IMG/VR virus record: IMGVR_UViG_3300042922_000643
Span: 1 to 64,000 of that record
DNA length: 64,000 nt
Reading direction: 5' to 3' (one strand)
Shown: positions 4,305 through 63,532 of the stretch, in pieces
Position numbering within the stretch: the first letter of the stretch is position 1
How the letters are laid out: each line of letters starts with the position of its first letter
Position numbers and translations under genes: made by a program
The notes under the pieces: generated by a model
What the model was told of the DNA's origin: nothing
Databases searched by the model: none
Seen by the model: only the letters and a program-made list of their open reading frames with translations

Positions 4305-4677
4305 AGGAGATTCTAGTATGTTTAAACCAAATGTACATTTGAAGTATGTCATGGAAGTAGAAGATCTTCTTATAAAAGCTGTAGCTGCTCTCGATGAAGT
4401 ACAAAGTAAGGATATACTTGATGGTCGCGCTCAATATGCTATTAGCCAAATCCAAAAAATGATTCATGCAGTAGATCACGCCATCATTTCAGAACGTTAT
4501 GTTATGATGAATACGTTTGAAGCTGCAAAAGATAACCAGAAAGAATTATTAAATCGATCTGAACAACAACGTTTAGAACGTCTTGAAGGTATTAAAGAAA
4601 GAGCAAAAGAAGAAGGTAGCACTTATATTAGGTAAAATTTCTGGGTGGCGGTATGTTCTATCCAGGCATCGGTGCAT

Positions 4678-4748
4678 GGGGTAGGTAGCCCAAGTGAGAG
4701 GCGGCCTGACAAGGGAGGAGATGGCGGCGAAAACCCGCCCCTACCCCT
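4678..4748 (+). ncRNA. tRNA-like RNA A (no anticodon loop)
   Basis: Acceptor GGGGTAGG/CCTACCCC, then TA, D-arm GCC-CAAGTGAGA-GGC, CCT-GACA-AGG mini-hairpin, T-like arm GGCGG-CGAAAAC-CCGCC stacked on the acceptor; followed by a T-run. Confidence 0.6.
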
Positions 4749-4785
4749 ATACTTTTTTTATAGAAGTAGCACTACATAATGGGAG

Positions 4786-5121
4786 GTGAGATCCATGCAA
4801 AAACTTATTCGTGACAATGAAAAATGGATCATCGAAGAGTTACACGGCAAAGAAGCATACACTCGAACTATTGACGATGATACTTCTTTCATCTATGAAG
4901 GCACTAGAAAGCTTCTTCTTGATGCAGGAGAGTACGCAAGATCCAAAGATGTCTGTGAAAATTTGGAGAAGCTTGCAGATATTCTTGAGATTGTATATGC
5001 ATTAGGTGCTGCAAGCGGATTTTCTCCTGAGTTATTGGATGAAACAAGACAGAGCAAAGCAAAAACATACGGTCGATTTGATAAGAGGATCTTTCTTGTC
5101 GGAATTGATAACGGTCAATAA
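4786..5121 (+). CDS. Phosphoribosyl-ATP pyrophosphohydrolase / MazG-like NTP pyrophosphatase
   Basis: KLIRD N-terminus; LADILEIVYAL; K...GRFDKRIFL C-terminus. Confidence 0.7.
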   Translation: MRSMQKLIRDNEKWIIEELHGKEAYTRTIDDDTSFIYEGTRKLLLDAGEYARSKDVCENLEKLADILEIVYALGAASGFSPELLDETRQSKAKTYGRFDKRIFLVGIDNGQ

Positions 5122-5569
5122 GGAGATTTTTCTATGAGAGTTAACTTACAAAATAACGCAATGAAGCCGCGAATCAAACTCCTATCTCATAAAGAAATTC
5201 TTACCTGTTCTGACACTCAGTATGTCGTTAAGGAAAACAATGGATACTACTTGGCAACAAGAGAGCCAGAACATCTAGGAAGTAGGCCGACCATGCATGT
5301 TAAATTCCTTCGTGATTTTATAGTCACTTCTAAACCTAATCAGTCATCAAGAATATACAAAATCTTAGGATCGAAGTAAACTGAAATTGGGAGGTGAAGA
5401 AATGAACGAGAATGAAAAGCTATATCTGTGTGATACTATCACTATTCTCATTGATTACGATGGCTTTCGTACACCTGAAGGTTTGATGTCCCTAATCGAT
5501 GAAGTGAAAGAAAGACTCGTTAATATCCGTGACAATAAAGTCACATCGGATACGGTTTAACTTTTTAAT

Positions 5570-5747
5570 GTGCGCCTCGCTAGTTGGAGCATCAAGCTGG
5601 TTCGAGTCCAGCAGGCATGGGGTTGTTGGTGACTCACAAGGCAGCTAGAGGAACCAACAAATACTACAGAGGGAGTCCCACCAGAGGGAAATAAGGCTGT
5701 GGTTCAAAACTTCCGACACTGAGGTTTGTCCTGGTTTCTCAGTGTCA
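5570..5747 (+). ncRNA. tRNA-like element B (D and T arms only) followed by further hairpins
   Basis: GCT-AGTTGG-AGC D-arm; GCTGG-TTCGAGT-CCAGC T-arm; GCCT/AGGC closing stem; downstream stems TTGTTGGT/ACCAACAA and GACACTGAG/CTCAGTGTC. Confidence 0.55.
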
Positions 5748-5772
5748 CCCTATATATTAAGGAGCAATCATT

Positions 5773-7032: not shown

Positions 7033-7170
7033 TGCTGGAAGTAGCTTAGAGGGAGAGCGGCCCTGTGTAGGGGTGTATAAAGGCCGACATGGATATAGTT
7101 TACTGTTCAGACAGTGTTCTAAACATGGCGTCAACCTTAGCAGCGATGGTTCGAGTCCATCCTTCTAGCA
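7033..7170 (+). ncRNA. tRNA-like RNA C (anticodon arm replaced by a tetraloop hairpin, ~70-nt extra arm)
   Basis: Acceptor TGCTGGAAG/CTTCTAGCA; TA-GCTT-AGAGGGA-GAGC D-arm; CCCT-GTGT-AGGG; long arm capped by ACTGT-TCAG-ACAGT; GATGG-TTCGAGT-CCATC T-arm. Confidence 0.65.
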
Positions 7171-17840: not shown

Positions 17841-17942
17841 ATCACACCAGTTTTTCCCTGTTTGGATTATGATGAAAGTCCACTATATTTTTATCTAGTA
17901 TATAAACTTTCATCATATAATCCCAAAGAAGAGGTGTCCGAG

Positions 17943-19901
17943 ATGCACGAAAAGCACGTTGAATCACTACATCAAATGGCAGAAAACATTATCCAAGTTC
18001 AAGATGTTGATCTGGCAAGAGAAAACGCTAACCTGAATGGGGAGTCTTTCTCTGGCAAGATGAGCAAGATGGGTAGTGAGTTCTCCAAATGGTATGCAAA
18101 ATCGGTAATGATGCCAAGCAAATTGGTCAACGCCATTGACGAAAACTTTGTTTATGTTCATGATTTAGACCAATATGTATTAGGTACTACCAATTGTATC
18201 TTTATACCGTTTGGAAAGCTTCTTGAACGCGGATTTAATACAGGGAATGGTAGTGTACGGCCACCGAATTCGATCATGACAGCAATGTCTTTGGTCGCCA
18301 TCATCTTTCAGTCTCAACAGAACTCTCAATACGGCGGAGTCTCAGGAAACAAAATTGATTGGGACCTTGCTCCGTATGTAGACAAATCTTTTGCAAAGCA
18401 TTTCCTGGTAGGACTAGAGTTCCTGGAAGAAACTCTGCCACATCCTTTCACTATAGAAAACAAAGCTGACCTTACGTTCGACAATGCAATGCTTCGCGCT
18501 GTGTGCCCTAAGGCTTTTTCATATGCAGAAAAGCTGACTATCAATGAAACAAACCAAGCCGCCGAGAGTATGATCCACAATTTGAATACAATGTCGAGTC
18601 GTGCTGGTGGACAGATTCCTTTCACTAGTATCAACTATGGAACATGTACTTCACCTCAAGGGCGATTGGTTATCCGTGCAATCTTAAGAGCAACCATGAA
18701 TGGACTTGGGAATGGAGAAACTCCGATTTTCCCGCAACATATTTTCAAATGTAAAAAAGGTGTGAACCAATCTACAGAAGATCCAAACTATGATCTGTTC
18801 CTCGAAGCAATTGAGTGTTCGTCGAAGCGTCTTTACCCTAACTTTGCGAATATTGATGCACCATTCAATCTTCAATACTATAACCCCGAAGATCCTGATA
18901 CAGAGTTTGCAACAATGGGCTGCCGTACACGCGTAATTTCTGATCGCTTCGGCTACAACCATCTTTCAGGTAAGGGAAACCTTTCTTTCAACACTCTGAA
19001 TCTAGTAAAGCTAGGGCTGGAATATGGTATCGCTTTAGGAGAACGTTCAGAAGCGGACTTAGAAAGTTTCTATTACGAACTCTATCACTATATGGATCTA
19101 TCTTTAGAAGGTTTGATTCATCGCTTTGAGATTCAAGCGGAGCAACAAGCCAAGGCCTCTGATTTCATGATGCGTGAAGGTGTCTGGGAAAATGGCGAGA
19201 AGCTTGAACCAGAAGATAAGGTTCGTGAACATATCAAACATGGTTCCTTGTCTATTGGTTTTATTGGAGTCGCTGAGTGTATGAAGGCACTCTTTGGCAA
19301 GCACCATGGTGAGGACCCTGAAGTAATGAAGTTTGCAGTTGATCTCATCGATACGATTCGACAATATTGTGATCGTAAATCAGACGAGCACAACCTGAAC
19401 ATTACACTATTTGCTACACCTGCTGAAGGACTATCTGGTAAGTTTACCAAGAGTGATCGTCAGTACTATGGAAACATAGAAGGCGTAACAGACCGTGAAT
19501 ACTATACAAATTCGTTCCATATCCCTGTATACTACGATATGAAAGCTGCTGATAAGATTCGCGCCGAAGCACCGTTCCATGAACTGTGTAACGCAGGAGC
19601 TATCTCTTATATCGAACTAGACGGAAACGCACGGAACAATCAACTGGCTTTCTTAAAGATCGTACAGTACGCATTGTCTCAAAACATCAGTTATTTTAGC
19701 GTTAATCATCCCGTAGATCGATGCCCTTCCTGCGGCTACGAGGGCTCTATTGGAGACACTTGTCCGAACTGTGCAGCAGATGAATCTACTCATCCTTTCA
19801 GACGCTTACGCCGTGTCACAGGCTACCTGACAGGAGACTATACGACTCGATTCAATAGTGCGAAACAAGCTGAGGTTAGAGATCGGGTTAAACATCTATG
19901 A
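17943..19901 (+). CDS. nrdD: Anaerobic (class III) ribonucleotide reductase, without ATP cone
   Basis: ENAN, YVHDLD, TTNC, TMGCRT, TPAEGL, YYTNSFH, CPSC/CPNC, RRVTGY glycyl-radical motif; ATG17943 after GAGGTG. Confidence 0.96.
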   Translation: MHEKHVESLHQMAENIIQVQDVDLARENANLNGESFSGKMSKMGSEFSKWYAKSVMMPSKLVNAIDENFVYVHDLDQYVLGTTNCIFIPFGKLLERGFNTGNGSVRPPNSIMTAMSLVAIIFQSQQNSQYGGVSGNKIDWDLAPYVDKSFAKHFLVGLEFLEETLPHPFTIENKADLTFDNAMLRAVCPKAFSYAEKLTINETNQAAESMIHNLNTMSSRAGGQIPFTSINYGTCTSPQGRLVIRAILRATMNGLGNGETPIFPQHIFKCKKGVNQSTEDPNYDLFLEAIECSSKRLYPNFANIDAPFNLQYYNPEDPDTEFATMGCRTRVISDRFGYNHLSGKGNLSFNTLNLVKLGLEYGIALGERSEADLESFYYELYHYMDLSLEGLIHRFEIQAEQQAKASDFMMREGVWENGEKLEPEDKVREHIKHGSLSIGFIGVAECMKALFGKHHGEDPEVMKFAVDLIDTIRQYCDRKSDEHNLNITLFATPAEGLSGKFTKSDRQYYGNIEGVTDREYYTNSFHIPVYYDMKAADKIRAEAPFHELCNAGAISYIELDGNARNNQLAFLKIVQYALSQNISYFSVNHPVDRCPSCGYEGSIGDTCPNCAADESTHPFRRLRRVTGYLTGDYTTRFNSAKQAEVRDRVKHL

Positions 19902-33407: not shown

Positions 33408-34628
33408 TTGACAACAGAAGTGAGACCTATGGGTGTTTCGTGTCCTTTAAAATGTGTTTATTGCTATCAAGAACCCCAGAGGGTTGCGGGAAATACTAAT
33501 GCAAAATATGATTTGGCGAAGATGATTCAGGAGATCTCAAAGACTCGAACAAAGAATATTAATTTCTTTGGTGGCGAGATCTTAATGATGCCTATAGAAG
33601 ATCTAGAGGTACTGCTGGCTTACGCTCATGTTAAGTTCGGTGGATCAGGTGTTCAAACCAGCGGATCTATCATGAGAGATGAACATATTGAACTCTTCAA
33701 AAAGTACAATGTTCAGCTGGGCTTCTCCATTGACGGTCCTAACGAGCTAAACAGTCTCCGAGTTCCACGCAATCCAAAGACTCCTATTGAAAGTACAACG
33801 GATAATACAATGAAATATATCAAGCTATCAAAAGAAGCTGGGCTTGATGTAGGCCTTATTATTACCCTTCATAGAGAAAACTCTACTCCAGAACGTATTC
33901 CACGGTTGTTTAATTTTATCAAGTGGTTATGGGATCTTGGTATTCGTAGCGGGAATATTCATACTCTAGAAATTGAATCTACAATGCCGAACCACGACTT
34001 TGTATTGACACAAGAAGAGAACATCTGGGCTTACACCCAACTTGCCGAGTTCTTTAAAACGCTTCCTGACCATGGATGGAATCCTTTCGCAGAGATTAAA
34101 GACTTACTGATGGGTAACGATCAAAAAACTCTTTGTTATTGGCACCGATGCGATCCATTGAATACTCAAGCTGTCCACGGAATCGAAGGTGACGGTGCAA
34201 TCTCTAACTGTGGACGAGCAAATAAAGAAGGAATTGACTGGGTCAAAGCTCCTGATAATTATTATGCAAGATACATCAGCTTCTATCATACGCCTCAAGA
34301 TATGGGTGGCTGTAATGGATGCCGCTTCTGGACAGTATGCGGAGGAAGTTGCCCAGGTGAATCCGATCAGGGGGATTTCAGAAATAAAACAACACATTGC
34401 TCTACTCAGAAAGCAATACTTTCCTATTATGAAAAAGAACTTATTGATGAAGGCAAGCTACCCATTACGACATCGCCTTTGCTTCCTCTTGTTGAACAGC
34501 TCGTTCTTAATGGTCTTGAAAGAGGAGAGAACTTATATCTTAATACTGTTATTTCAATGATTGAAGAGATGAGAACAGAAGTCATCCAACTGGAAGTCGT
34601 AGAGGAGGATATCAATGAAACTACTTGA
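33408..34628 (+). CDS. Radical SAM/SPASM peptide or protein maturase
   Basis: CPLKCVYC, FFGGE, QTSG, FSIDGP; SPASM cysteines CYWHRC, NC, CNGC-x5-C-x3-C-x15-C. Confidence 0.92.
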   Translation: MTTEVRPMGVSCPLKCVYCYQEPQRVAGNTNAKYDLAKMIQEISKTRTKNINFFGGEILMMPIEDLEVLLAYAHVKFGGSGVQTSGSIMRDEHIELFKKYNVQLGFSIDGPNELNSLRVPRNPKTPIESTTDNTMKYIKLSKEAGLDVGLIITLHRENSTPERIPRLFNFIKWLWDLGIRSGNIHTLEIESTMPNHDFVLTQEENIWAYTQLAEFFKTLPDHGWNPFAEIKDLLMGNDQKTLCYWHRCDPLNTQAVHGIEGDGAISNCGRANKEGIDWVKAPDNYYARYISFYHTPQDMGGCNGCRFWTVCGGSCPGESDQGDFRNKTTHCSTQKAILSYYEKELIDEGKLPITTSPLLPLVEQLVLNGLERGENLYLNTVISMIEEMRTEVIQLEVVEEDINETT

Positions 34629-62194: not shown

Positions 62195-63532
62195 TCATTG
62201 CAATTTTTCCACTCCCAGTTGAGCCAGTTTGGAGCGGACCACTGTTTCCAATGTGATGTGACCAACGATATCTTCACCTTTGAATTTATCCACCGTGTAT
62301 GTAAGACCATTGCTGCTTGGCGTTAGTCGATGATCATCGATCTGTTGTGAGCTAATGTCTCCCAGGAAGACTACCTTACTACCCTCAGCAGCACGAGTAA
62401 TGATTGTCGCAGCTTCATGTGCTGTTAAGTTTTGTGCGTCATCCACAATGATGAACTGACCAGGAATACTTCTACCACGAAGATGAGCCAACGCTTCAAG
62501 CTCTAGAAATTTATTGTCAATGAGTCTTTGAATCTTATCACTTGAAGCCATGAATTTATCATCTTTATCTTCTTCTTTTTCAAGAAGGTACTCTAGTGCG
62601 TCAAAGGTGGAAGCCATCCATGGACTTAGCTTTTCAAGCTTATTCCCAGGTAGATAGCCAATATCTTTACCCACAGGAATCAGTGGCCGCATTACTACGA
62701 CTCTATTATATATTCCGTCTTTTCCTAATACTTGTTCTAGCGCTGCTGCCAATGTAAGTAATGTCTTTCCTGATCCAGAAGGACCGATTGCTGAAACAAA
62801 TTCAATACTTGGGTCAAGCAAGAGATGGAGCAAGAACTTTTGTTCTAGAACTTCATTGCCTTCTTTATCTTTTTTCGGCTTAATTCCCCACGCACGATAT
62901 TCATGTTTCAATGCTTGGATACTATGTGTTCCCGAATCATAAATACCTTGATGAATACCACCCGCTGGATCTTTCATAATTACAAACTGATTATGTACTA
63001 ATCTACGAGTACCTACATCAAAGCCCTGGATCGGATATGAACTATAGAACTCTTTTAATTCTTCTTTTGTAATATCGATATGTCGTACACCTGAATAAAG
63101 TTTACTTACGTTTACATCTTCAGGAGCGAAGTTCTGAGTATCAATTTTCAGAGAGTCTGCAATAACTCGAACATTAATATCTTGGCTGATTAAGGCCGCA
63201 TCTTCATCTCGCGCTGCTTTAATGATTTGGTGATCGTTCTTCTTCAGATCAAGGTCTTCCGCCTTGACAAGGACCTGAACCCAATGGCCTTCGTATGGAA
63301 CACCCGCATCCAGCTGGCCTCTTGTACGAAGCTCATCCAAGAATCTTGTAGTTGCTCGGCAATGTTCATTGATAGGGTCGTGACCCTTCTTGAACTTGTC
63401 TAGCTCGTTTAAAACTACTAGAGGAATAATTACATGAGTGGGTTCACCAAAACTCTTCAGTACGTCATACAGTGGCCGATCTAAAAGCACATTGGTATCA
63501 ACCACGACGCGTTTCAATTGTTGCGCTGCCAA
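62195..63532 (-). CDS. phoH: PIN plus PhoH ATPase (PhoH2/YlaK-like)
   Basis: VVDTNVLL PIN motif, GPSGSGKT, GYLPG, RGRS, DDAQN, GD..QID. Confidence 0.92.
   Translation of the reverse strand: MAAQQLKRVVVDTNVLLDRPLYDVLKSFGEPTHVIIPLVVLNELDKFKKGHDPINEHCRATTRFLDELRTRGQLDAGVPYEGHWVQVLVKAEDLDLKKNDHQIIKAARDEDAALISQDINVRVIADSLKIDTQNFAPEDVNVSKLYSGVRHIDITKEELKEFYSSYPIQGFDVGTRRLVHNQFVIMKDPAGGIHQGIYDSGTHSIQALKHEYRAWGIKPKKDKEGNEVLEQKFLLHLLLDPSIEFVSAIGPSGSGKTLLTLAAALEQVLGKDGIYNRVVVMRPLIPVGKDIGYLPGNKLEKLSPWMASTFDALEYLLEKEEDKDDKFMASSDKIQRLIDNKFLELEALAHLRGRSIPGQFIIVDDAQNLTAHEAATIITRAAEGSKVVFLGDISSQQIDDHRLTPSSNGLTYTVDKFKGEDIVGHITLETVVRSKLAQLGVEKLQ

What the first reader, a model, noticed from the sequence alone, without database searches (positions are those of the whole stretch)
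4641..4760. tRNA mimic A has the same anticodon-less design as mimic C
Seen: GC-rich intergenic element with an 8-bp acceptor, TA-GCC D-arm, CCT-GACA-AGG tetraloop hairpin in the anticodon position, and a 5-bp/7-nt T-like arm stacked on the acceptor. It is preceded by another hairpin (4641-4665) and followed by a T-run. Its sequence differs from mimic C but the architecture matches (8/5 stack plus tetraloop), which argues for a maintained RNA class rather than random tRNA decay.
Basis: partly seen in the sequence, partly recalled or inferred. Interest (0 to 1): 0.6.

Follow-up and report, generated by a model that had tools for sequence, protein, structure and literature searches.

The report
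Conserved anticodon-less cloverleaf RNA in phages
The flagged stretch is a real 70-base RNA gene shaped like a transfer RNA but with no anticodon; unrelated soil phages carry the same element inside their tRNA gene arrays, it matches no catalogued RNA family, and its job is unknown.

Summary
Window 4678-4747 (+) folds into an 8-bp closing stem stacked on a 5-bp/7-nt hairpin, plus a 3-bp D-like arm and a short capped hairpin. A hairpin precedes it and a T-run follows.

The decisive result is new. A scan with the element's 19-mer found homologs in high-GC (68-70%) soil phage contigs. In them both outer stems are rewritten by compensatory changes: 5 of 8 and 3 of 5 pairs change on both sides, and all stay paired. 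Nearly every unpaired base is identical.

In those phages the element sits in 36-37-gene tRNA arrays, 6 nt upstream of tRNA-Ala. So it is a maintained RNA class, not tRNA decay, not a chance fold and not merely a terminator.

It is not the same class as "mimic C". C is a tRNA by the Rfam model, with canonical D and T loops. A scores nothing with tRNA, tmRNA or YrlA models and has its own invariant loops.

Most likely it is excised with neighbouring RNAs by tRNA-processing enzymes and acts in trans. One invariant junction resembles a Shine-Dalgarno sequence. Function is inferred only: there are no RNA data and only three sequence types.

The parts
4641..4665 (+). Upstream hairpin: 8 bp including two G-U pairs, 9-nt loop, starting 6 nt after the stop codon of ORF 4318-4635
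   Evidence: Both homolog types also have an 8-bp hairpin 15-23 nt upstream (L119 3169-3191, L111 822-849). The hairpin sequences are unrelated, so whether it belongs to the unit is unproven.
4678..4685 (+). 5' strand of the 8-bp closing (acceptor-like) stem
   Evidence: Pairs with 4740-4747, P about 0.99. 5 of 8 pairs changed on both sides in homologs, all cells paired.
4686..4687 (+). Junction UA, in the position of tRNA U8/A9; invariant
   Evidence: Identical in all three sequence types and not imposed by the search pattern.
4688..4702 (+). D-like arm: GCC, loop CAAGUGAGA, GGC; invariant including the stem
   Evidence: Its invariance is partly forced, because this stretch was the search pattern. 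The 3'-half scan that did not impose it recovered only copies that keep it, plus one spurious hit.
4703..4704 (+). Junction GG; invariant
   Evidence: It lies inside the search pattern.
4705..4715 (+). Short capped hairpin in the anticodon position: CCU, loop GACAA, GGG. It is CCC-GACAA-GGG in L119 and CCC-GAAA-GGG in the L111 type. There is no 7-nt anticodon loop.
   Evidence: All cells pair in the shifted register. The loop varies between GACAA and the GNRA tetraloop GAAA.
4716..4722 (+). Purine-rich junction AGGAGAU; with the preceding GGG it reads GGGAGGAGAU. Invariant, predicted unpaired, Shine-Dalgarno-like.
   Evidence: Identical in all types without being imposed. Unpaired probability 0.8-1.0. 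Predicted duplex with the textbook 16S 3' tail is -13.5 to -16.0 kcal/mol, against -20.7 for a perfect SD (inference).
4723..4739 (+). T-like arm: 5-bp stem and 7-nt loop CGAAAAC (CGGAAAC in homologs), stacked directly on the closing stem
   Evidence: P about 0.94. 3 of 5 pairs changed on both sides in homologs, all paired. The loop lacks the tRNA UUCRA motif.
4740..4747 (+). 3' strand of the closing stem
4753..4759 (+). Run of seven T, 5 nt after the stem; specific to the window copy
   Evidence: It is absent from the homologs, where a tRNA-Ala gene starts 6 nt after the element. The phage's own strong terminators are simple hairpins with a gap of 0-1 nt to the T-run.

Best explanation
Window 4678-4747 encodes a member of a previously uncatalogued family of about 70-nt cloverleaf RNAs carried by phages.

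The fold is an 8-bp closing stem coaxial with a 5-bp hairpin, giving a 13-bp stack against 12 bp in ordinary tRNA. It also has a 3-bp D-like arm and a 3-bp hairpin capped by a GNRA-type loop where the anticodon arm would be. It cannot decode.

The stems are free to vary, but the junctions and loops are fixed: UA, CAAGUGAGA, GG, GGGAGGAGAU and CGRAAAC.

Shown here:
- the fold;
- its conservation by covariation between a 40%-GC Bacillus-type jumbo phage (0305phi8-36 lineage) and 68-70%-GC phages;
- its placement in the latter as a unit of a tRNA gene array, 6 nt before tRNA-Ala.

Inferred:
- It is transcribed with its neighbours and cut out by the tRNA-processing machinery. RNase P acting on the downstream tRNA, or on the element's own 13-bp stack, and RNase Z or exonucleases would do this.
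- It accumulates as a small stable RNA.
- It acts in trans through its invariant single-stranded bases on a partner common to very different hosts.

The most concrete candidate partner is the 3' tail of 16S rRNA on the 30S subunit, because the invariant junction matches the extended Shine-Dalgarno complement at 8 of 9 positions. This last step is speculative.

The confidence given (0.55) is for the statement as a whole. Taken separately: about 0.9 that this is a real, conserved, tRNA-shaped structured RNA; about 0.5 that it is excised as a small RNA and acts in trans; about 0.12 for the 16S/30S target.
For: Homologs and covariation:
- A metagenome scan with the 19-mer of the D-like arm found 5 high-GC contigs carrying a full-length match (R1 66 bits, E 1.5e-13).
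- IMG/VR scans found three viral contigs representing two sequence types.
- Helix 1 has 5 of 8 pairs changed on both sides and helix 4 has 3 of 5. 98-100% of cells are paired, 0 of 500 shuffles reach the observed values, and slid controls collapse.
- RNAalifold predicts the same cloverleaf on its own.
- The high-GC copies fold into it as their MFE.
- Window versus L119: 17 of 26 outer-stem bases differ against 2 of 25 elsewhere, after removing the 19 columns forced by the search pattern. Fisher p = 2.8e-5.

Context:
- In the high-GC phages it lies between tRNA-Trp and tRNA-Ala(GGC) in arrays of 36-37 tRNAs, on the same strand, 6 nt before tRNA-Ala.
- There is one copy per genome.
- The window phage and those phages share no detectable proteins except one weak HTH match. 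Conservation is therefore not explained by recent co-descent of the region.

Not a known family: no Rfam family at E up to 10 in either version, and no ARAGORN tRNA or tmRNA call.

Not a plain terminator.

Junction: unpaired and SD-like.
Against: - There are only three sequence types, effectively two deep lineages. The two high-GC types differ from each other at just five aligned columns: one fully compensated pair (columns 3/68) and an indel-affected stretch in the short hairpin's loop.
- All homologs were retrieved with exact patterns taken from the element. Family size is therefore a lower bound, and the invariance of columns 11-29 is partly an ascertainment effect.
- There is no RNA evidence of any kind: only soil DNA runs hold the sequence.
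- On the window copy alone the two inner arms are thermodynamically ambiguous.
- The folding energy of the 130-nt region is no better than shuffles (z +0.39).
- The element is absent from four isolated relatives of the phage, from GenBank phages by blastn, and from six Ro60-bearing large-phage contigs related to the high-GC carriers. It is rare and dispensable for most relatives.
- Processing by RNase P or Z, stability and trans action are all inferred. The loops lack the D-loop GG and T-loop UUC that form the tRNA elbow, which several of these enzymes use.
- The SD resemblance could be a coincidence of a purine-rich junction.
Confidence: 0.55

Rival explanations
1. It is only a cis-acting 3'-end element: a branched intrinsic terminator and/or a 3' stabiliser for the mRNA of ORF 4318-4635.
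For: It lies in the 3' UTR, 43 nt after the stop codon, is GC-rich, and is followed by T7. A 3-bp extension (4671-4673 with 4751-4753) can bring a helix up to the T-run. A local alternative hairpin, GGGAGG with CCUACCC, exists.
Against: Homologs have no T-run and are followed 6 nt later by a tRNA gene. A terminator does not need invariant loops and junctions across hosts of 40% and 70% GC. This phage's clear terminators are simple 8-13-bp hairpins with a gap of 0-1 nt to the T-run, whereas here the gap is 5-6 nt. The consensus scan calls no terminator here.
Confidence: 0.1
2. It is a cis-regulatory leader, a riboswitch-like or attenuator element controlling the downstream MazG-like gene (4786/4795-5121).
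For: It lies 38 nt upstream of the next gene's first possible start codon (GTG 4786). It has a multi-helix junction with conserved junction bases, and its 3' strand has two mutually exclusive pairings.
Against: The downstream neighbour is not conserved: a MazG-like gene here and tRNA-Ala in the homologs. The alternative pairing is not conserved in the homologs (reading of the A6 alignment). No riboswitch family matches.
Confidence: 0.07
3. It is a Y-RNA-like partner of a Ro60/Rsr protein, a relative of YrlA-type tRNA mimics.
For: In two of the high-GC phages a Ro60 (TROVE + vWA) gene follows the same tRNA array on the same strand. YrlA RNAs are tRNA mimics found in Ro60-encoding phages (PMC4201824).
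Against: The window phage and its four relatives encode no TROVE or vWA_Ro60 domain. The element is about 5.3 kb from rsr, at the far end of the array. The GNCGAAN0-1G motif is not conserved, and the window copy lacks its final G. There is no YrlA model hit. Six other Ro60-bearing contigs lack the element within 10 kb.
Confidence: 0.07
4. It is a decaying tRNA pseudogene or a chance GC-rich fold with no function.
For: The phage has no canonical tRNA but several tRNA-like remnants. The bare stem geometry occurs 9 times in the genome by chance. The MFE z-score is unremarkable.
Against: Compensatory changes in 8 pairs coexist with near-identity of unpaired bases between phages that share no other detectable sequence. 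Decay would do the opposite.
Confidence: 0.02

Closest known systems
Canonical tRNA and phage tRNA-array genes (Rfam RF00005)
   Same: Four-helix cloverleaf of tRNA size. UA follows the acceptor-like stem. A 5-bp stem with a 7-nt loop stacks on the acceptor-like stem. In the high-GC phages it occupies a slot in a tRNA array with tRNA-like spacing.
   Different: 8+5 rather than 7+5 stack. No 7-nt anticodon loop. No D-loop GG and no T-loop UUCRA. Not detected by RF00005 at E up to 10 or by ARAGORN. Its loops form an invariant set of their own.
YrlA / bacterial Y RNAs (tRNA-mimicking partners of Ro60/Rsr; PMC4201824)
   Same: Non-decoding tRNA mimics found in bacteria and phages. M. smegmatis YrlA is cut by RNase P and receives CCA. 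Two carriers of the present family also encode Ro60 next to the array.
   Different: YrlA keeps canonical D and T arms and is circularly permuted: its ends lie at the Ro-binding stem and its acceptor is capped. It carries GNCGAAN0-1G and lies within 4 kb of rsr. None of this holds for the window element, and its phage has no Ro60.
[quoted passage not shown]
   Same: Same phage lineage (portal 42% identical). Non-decoding tRNA-like elements in non-coding gaps of the early region.
   Different: Those two elements are recognisable tRNA derivatives (36 and 30.5 bits; an 8-nt loop and a 47-nt insertion) and resemble window elements C and 244722/244822, not A. Model R1 and model R2 find nothing in 0305phi8-36.
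tRNA-like processing signals and tRNA-like small RNAs outside translation (plant mitochondrial t-elements, mascRNA, tmRNA tRNA-like domain): from general knowledge, not tested here
   Same: Acceptor/T-type stacks without a working anticodon that are recognised by RNase P/Z or CCA-adding enzyme. This is the mechanism proposed for release of the RNA.
   Different: No sequence relationship. tmRNA models do not match. Those elements have no conserved purine junction or GNRA-capped arms.

Membership tests
tRNA (RF00005) | Covariance-model score at or above 29 bits, or a call by a tRNA finder | tested here: not met
   No RF00005 hit at E up to 10 on 4500-4900 or in the whole genome. ARAGORN default finds none, and it still does not call this element in relaxed mode.
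tRNA (RF00005) | 7-nt anticodon loop on a 5-bp stem | tested here: not met
   The arm is 3 bp with a 4-5-nt loop (GACAA or GAAA) in all members.
tRNA (RF00005) | Elbow nucleotides: D-loop GG and T-loop UUCRA | tested here: not met
   The loops are CAAGUGAGA and CGRAAAC in all members.
tRNA (RF00005) | Acceptor and T stems coaxially stacked, with UA-type junction after the acceptor | tested here: met
   8 bp plus 5 bp with no intervening base, and UA at 4686-4687. Supported by covariation. The stack is 13 bp, not 12.
tmRNA | Detection by ARAGORN -m or Rfam tmRNA models; a tag reading frame | tested here: not met
YrlA / Y RNA | Conserved GNCGAAN0-1G Rsr-binding motif near the 5' end, with canonical D and T arms | tested here: not met
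   Only GGCGAA in the T-like loop of the window copy resembles it, and that copy lacks the motif's final G. Homologs read GGCGGA. No YrlA hit. Criteria from PMC4201824.
YrlA / Y RNA | Encoded within about 4 kb of a Ro60/TROVE gene on the same strand | tested here: not met
   No TROVE or vWA_Ro60 in the window's genome. In G001 the element is 5.3 kb upstream of rsr.
Intrinsic terminator | GC-rich hairpin immediately followed by a U-tract, as a conserved property | tested here: not met
   5-nt gap here. No U-tract in homologs. Not called by the consensus scan.
Same class as window 'mimic C' (7035-7169) | Shared sequence/structure model | tested here: not met
   R1 and R2 hit only 4678-4747 in the genome. 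C is an RF00005 hit (31.5 bits) and A is not.
New family proposed here (8/5 anticodon-less cloverleaf) | Four helices kept by covariation plus the invariant junction and loop set | tested here: met
   Three sequence types only.
New family proposed here (8/5 anticodon-less cloverleaf) | Expressed and excised as a discrete small RNA | not testable with these tools
   Only DNA runs hold the sequence.

The most novel reading that the evidence does not exclude
The family is a phage-made tRNA-shaped RNA that displays an invariant Shine-Dalgarno mimic (GGGAGGAGAU) from its junction. After excision by the tRNA-processing enzymes it would dock on the anti-SD tail of 16S rRNA, or on the 30S subunit, to reprogram or protect host translation during infection. 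That would be a small RNA uniting tRNA shape with an mRNA signal, unrelated to tmRNA.
Probability: 0.12. Interest if true: 0.85.

Novelty: new variant of a known kind. Interest (0 to 1): 0.66.

Why it matters
Phages are known to carry tRNAs, tmRNAs and Y-RNA-type tRNA mimics. [quoted passage not shown]

This element shows that at least one such object is not debris. It is a defined RNA family with a fold kept by compensatory evolution, and with loops held constant between phages of hosts as different as low-GC Bacillus-type and high-GC, probably actinobacterial, bacteria. That pattern points to a partner conserved across bacteria.

Its placement as a unit in tRNA arrays suggests how it is made. 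Its lack of an anticodon shows that it does something other than decode.

The family gives a concrete, small, testable RNA: processing, binding partner, effect on infection. It also gives a covariance model that can be run over viromes. If the Shine-Dalgarno mimicry is real, it would be a new way for a virus to address the ribosome.

Tried and rejected
- Near and distant blastn of the region against GenBank phages: no match.
- Synteny route. Both flanking proteins are orphans in the 5.8-billion-cluster word search. Neither has a relative in IMG/VR. The downstream MazG-like protein has none in GenBank phages. Neither has one in the four isolated relatives. RecA gave no IMG/VR relatives. Portal relatives in IMG/VR were short structural-region fragments.
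- Near-identical contigs from other soil samples carry the element unchanged: 1 SNP in 6.3 kb elsewhere, so they are uninformative.
- First IMG/VR pattern, built on the acceptor stem: one chance hit.
- The 80 loci around the widespread VG64-family gene: no element.
- The 3'-half pattern in bacterial genomes: 51 hits, all in coding DNA reading Glu-Glu-Ile/Met-x-Ala-Glu-Thr with no 5' half, so rejected as noise. L114, L117, L118 and L122 were rejected in the same way.
- Ro60 route: six large-phage contigs with Ro60 homologs have no element within 10 kb.
- HisRS-type identity (G-1:C73), suggested by the 8th pair in A and C: rejected, because the homologs have C:G at that pair.
- HDV-like, hammerhead, k-turn and box C/D readings were considered by eye against the three sequences and dropped. 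The needed motifs, for example CUGA, are not conserved. The sR36 hit is E 0.39.
- The short reading frame starting at the AUG in GAGAUGG is not conserved: homologs read AUC.
- Expression: the run search returned only three soil DNA runs.

Full report
**What the window is.** The window is the first 64 kb of a 251,543-bp IMG/VR virus record, about 40% GC. Its portal protein is 42-47% identical to those of Bacillus phages vB_BceM_WH1, Edson, KLEB27-3 and 0305phi8-36. It is therefore a jumbo myovirus of the 0305phi8-36 lineage. Only soil-metagenome DNA runs hold it. The finding lies in a run of small + strand early genes, between ORF 4318-4635 and a MazG-like ORF at 4786/4795-5121. Neither ORF has relatives elsewhere.

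**The observation.**
- An 8-bp perfect closing stem, 4678-4685 with 4740-4747.
- UA.
- A 3-bp D-like arm with a 9-nt loop, 4688-4702.
- A short capped hairpin, 4705-4715.
- A 5-bp/7-nt hairpin, 4723-4739, abutting the 3' strand of the closing stem.
- An upstream 8-bp hairpin, 4641-4665.
- A T7 run, which is at 4753-4759, five bases after the stem.

In the window copy the two outer helices are robust in the ensemble (P 0.94-0.99). The whole 130-nt region folds no better than shuffles (z +0.39). The 75-nt core is marginal (z -1.85).

The geometry is rare in shuffles of the GC-rich island: 43 of 20,000 for the stack, 13 with a D-like arm, and 2 for the 8-bp version. The same loose geometry occurs 9 times in the 503 kb of both strands, the others being AT-rich and weak. 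On the window alone the case was therefore suggestive but not proven. No tRNA finder or Rfam model recognises the element.

**Finding relatives.** Synteny failed.
- The flanking proteins are orphans.
- Near-identical contigs from other soil samples carry an unchanged element.
- The four isolated relatives lack both the flanking genes and the element.

A single-sequence covariance model (R1) hit only itself in the genome.

It returned eight stretches. Five of these, from contigs of 63-68% GC, give full-length matches to R1 (66 bits, E 1.5e-13). The other three are partial and look like chance 19-mer matches in coding DNA.

Two gapped patterns then recovered three IMG/VR viral contigs of 68-70% GC, representing two sequence types. 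The 5'+3' pattern found nothing in 185,579 bacterial and archaeal species genomes. The 51 bacterial hits to the 3'-half pattern are coding-sequence noise. GenBank phages have no match. There is one copy per carrier genome.

**Covariation.** Three sequence types align without ambiguity (alignment A6).
- In the closing stem, 5 of 8 pairs change on both sides and one changes G-C to G-U.
- In the T-like stem, 3 of 5 pairs change on both sides.
- Every cell stays paired.
- None of 500 column shuffles reaches the observed values.
- Sliding the partners by one to three columns destroys the signal.
- RNAalifold, run independently, predicts the same four helices and adds a G-C pair inside the T-like loop.
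- The high-GC copies adopt the cloverleaf as their MFE.

The short hairpin fits all three sequences best as three pairs (C-G, C-G, Y-G) closing GACAA or GAAA. That is a GNRA-type cap with or without an extra C.

Outside the two outer stems the sequences are almost identical. Window against L119, 17 of 26 outer-stem bases differ but only 2 of 44 others do (p = 4.8e-8). Nineteen of those 44 columns were forced identical by the search pattern. Without them the contrast is 17/26 against 2/25 (p = 2.8e-5).

The segments that were not imposed in the first scan and are nevertheless identical are UA, GGGAGGAGAU, and the T-like loop with its closing pairs. The window phage and the high-GC contigs share no detectable protein except a weak HTH match. 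Stems rewritten while loops stay frozen means selection on a folded RNA. It does not fit recent transfer or decay.

**Context in the homologs.** The high-GC contigs are fragments of 31-56 kb, estimated 22-26% complete. They carry arrays of 36-37 tRNA genes. The element lies on the array strand after tRNA-Trp, and ends 6 nt before tRNA-Ala(GGC). As in the window, an 8-bp hairpin of unrelated sequence precedes it by 15-23 nt.

In two of these phages a Ro60/TROVE gene follows the array. In one, a class A RNase P RNA (252.7 bits) lies inside the array. The element thus occupies a tRNA slot. Anything between two tRNAs of such an array is released when RNase P cuts the 5' end of the downstream tRNA. 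This is established knowledge of tRNA operon processing, applied here by inference.

**What it is not.**
- *Not a tRNA.* There is no anticodon loop and no elbow nucleotides, and no model hit.
- *Not tmRNA.*
- *Not YrlA.* The defining motif, the canonical arms and the nearby rsr are all missing; the window genome and its relatives have no TROVE domain.
- *Not a plain terminator.* This phage's terminators are simple hairpins flush with the T-run, and the homologs have no T-run.
- *Not a leader for a specific gene.* The downstream neighbour differs between carriers.
- *Not of one class with mimic C.* C (7035-7169) is an RF00005 hit with canonical D and T loops and 73 nt in place of the anticodon arm. 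Its closest analogue is the insertion-bearing tRNA-like element of 0305phi8-36.

The genome does hold a set of tRNA derivatives with disabled anticodon arms: C, 244722-244795 and 244822-244893, plus a T-arm-bearing fragment near 5570-5620. It holds no canonical tRNA. That is a notable pattern, but these are a different kind of object from A.

**How it most likely works.**
- *Shown:* a conserved 8/5 cloverleaf without an anticodon, with invariant unpaired bases, one copy per genome, and a tRNA-array slot in other phages.
- *Inferred:* co-transcription with neighbours, excision by the tRNA-processing enzymes, accumulation as a small RNA, and trans action on a partner common to distant hosts.

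The invariant junction GGGAGGAGAU is predicted unpaired (P 0.8-1.0). It matches the extended Shine-Dalgarno complement of the 16S 3' tail at 8 of 9 positions, or 10 of 11 in the high-GC copies. Predicted duplexes are -13.5 to -16 kcal/mol, against -20.7 for a perfect SD (the 16S tail was typed from textbook knowledge). A 30S/anti-SD target is therefore the most concrete hypothesis. I rate it at about one in eight. A conserved RNA-binding protein or a tRNA enzyme are equally open.

**Limits.**
- There are three sequence types, amounting to two deep lineages.
- Retrieval was by exact words from the element itself.
- There are no RNA data.
- No literature match was found for the core motifs in the held library. 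The 2023 catalogue of viral structured RNAs could not be checked, because its supplements are not held.

Noticed in passing
window 7035-7169 (+): 'Mimic C' is a tRNA by RF00005 (31.5 bits), with canonical D and T arms and an acceptor that is 8-9 bp long when flanking bases are counted. Its 17-nt anticodon arm is replaced by 73 nt that fold into a long hairpin ending in ACUGU-UCAG-ACAGU. Bacillus phage 0305phi8-36 has an analogous element with a 47-nt insertion, annotated as an 'intron-containing Arg-tRNA' tRNA-like element. The two share TGC...GCA ends.
   Followed up: partly
window 5561-5765 (+): A 200-nt non-coding gap. It contains a canonical T arm (GCTGG-TTCGAGT-CCAGC, 5596-5612) and a D-like arm with AGTTGG, joined by 5 nt with no anticodon arm and only a weak acceptor. 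More structured sequence follows, ending in a 10-bp hairpin. The region folds better than shuffles (z -2.57).
   Followed up: partly
G000 244722-244795 and 244822-244893 (L006 4723-4796, 4823-4894): Two tandem tRNA-model hits (41 and 37 bits) whose anticodon arms are disabled. One has a 6-bp stem with a G-A mismatch and a 6-nt loop. The other has a 6-bp stem with a GUUG tetraloop, and its flanks extend the acceptor helix by 5 more pairs. The genome has no canonical tRNA.
   Followed up: partly
G000 about 244238-244720 (L006 4238-4720): About 480 nt of non-coding sequence (about 48% GC) directly upstream of the two tRNA-like genes. It has no Rfam match at E up to 1 and is a candidate for a larger unknown RNA.
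   Followed up: no
G000 248357-248786 (L006 8358-8787): A group I intron (RF00028, 50.1 bits) lies between ORFs L006 5736-8375 and 8816-9751, which look like two exons of one gene. The T-arm-like GGTTCGAATCC at about 248530 lies inside this intron.
   Followed up: no
L185 961-1288 (-), IMG/VR contig 3300031736_000007: A full-length class A bacterial RNase P RNA (252.7 bits) is encoded inside a 37-gene phage tRNA array.
   Followed up: no
L180 8891-10552 (+) and L184 15924-17663 (-): Ro60/Rsr orthologs (TROVE + vWA_Ro60) lie immediately after the tRNA arrays of two high-GC phages. Related large-phage contigs pair Ro60 with RtcB, a GH5 cellulase-family gene and sugar-modification genes (L186-L191). 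No YrlA reached the Rfam threshold in L180, L184 or L185.
   Followed up: partly
L120/L121, about 6 nt after the element: ARAGORN calls the next gene tRNA-Ala(GGC). My reading by eye of its anticodon arm suggests a 4-bp stem with a 9-nt loop (GUUG-CUCGGCAGA-CAAC), which does not obviously fit that call.
   Followed up: no
window 62195-63532 (-), 33408-34628 (+), 17862-19901 (+): The gene content includes a PIN-PhoH fusion protein, a radical SAM protein, an anaerobic ribonucleotide reductase NrdD, RecA, a UvrD-type helicase, an SNF2 helicase and a DnaG-type primase. NrdD hints at an anaerobic or facultative host.
   Followed up: no
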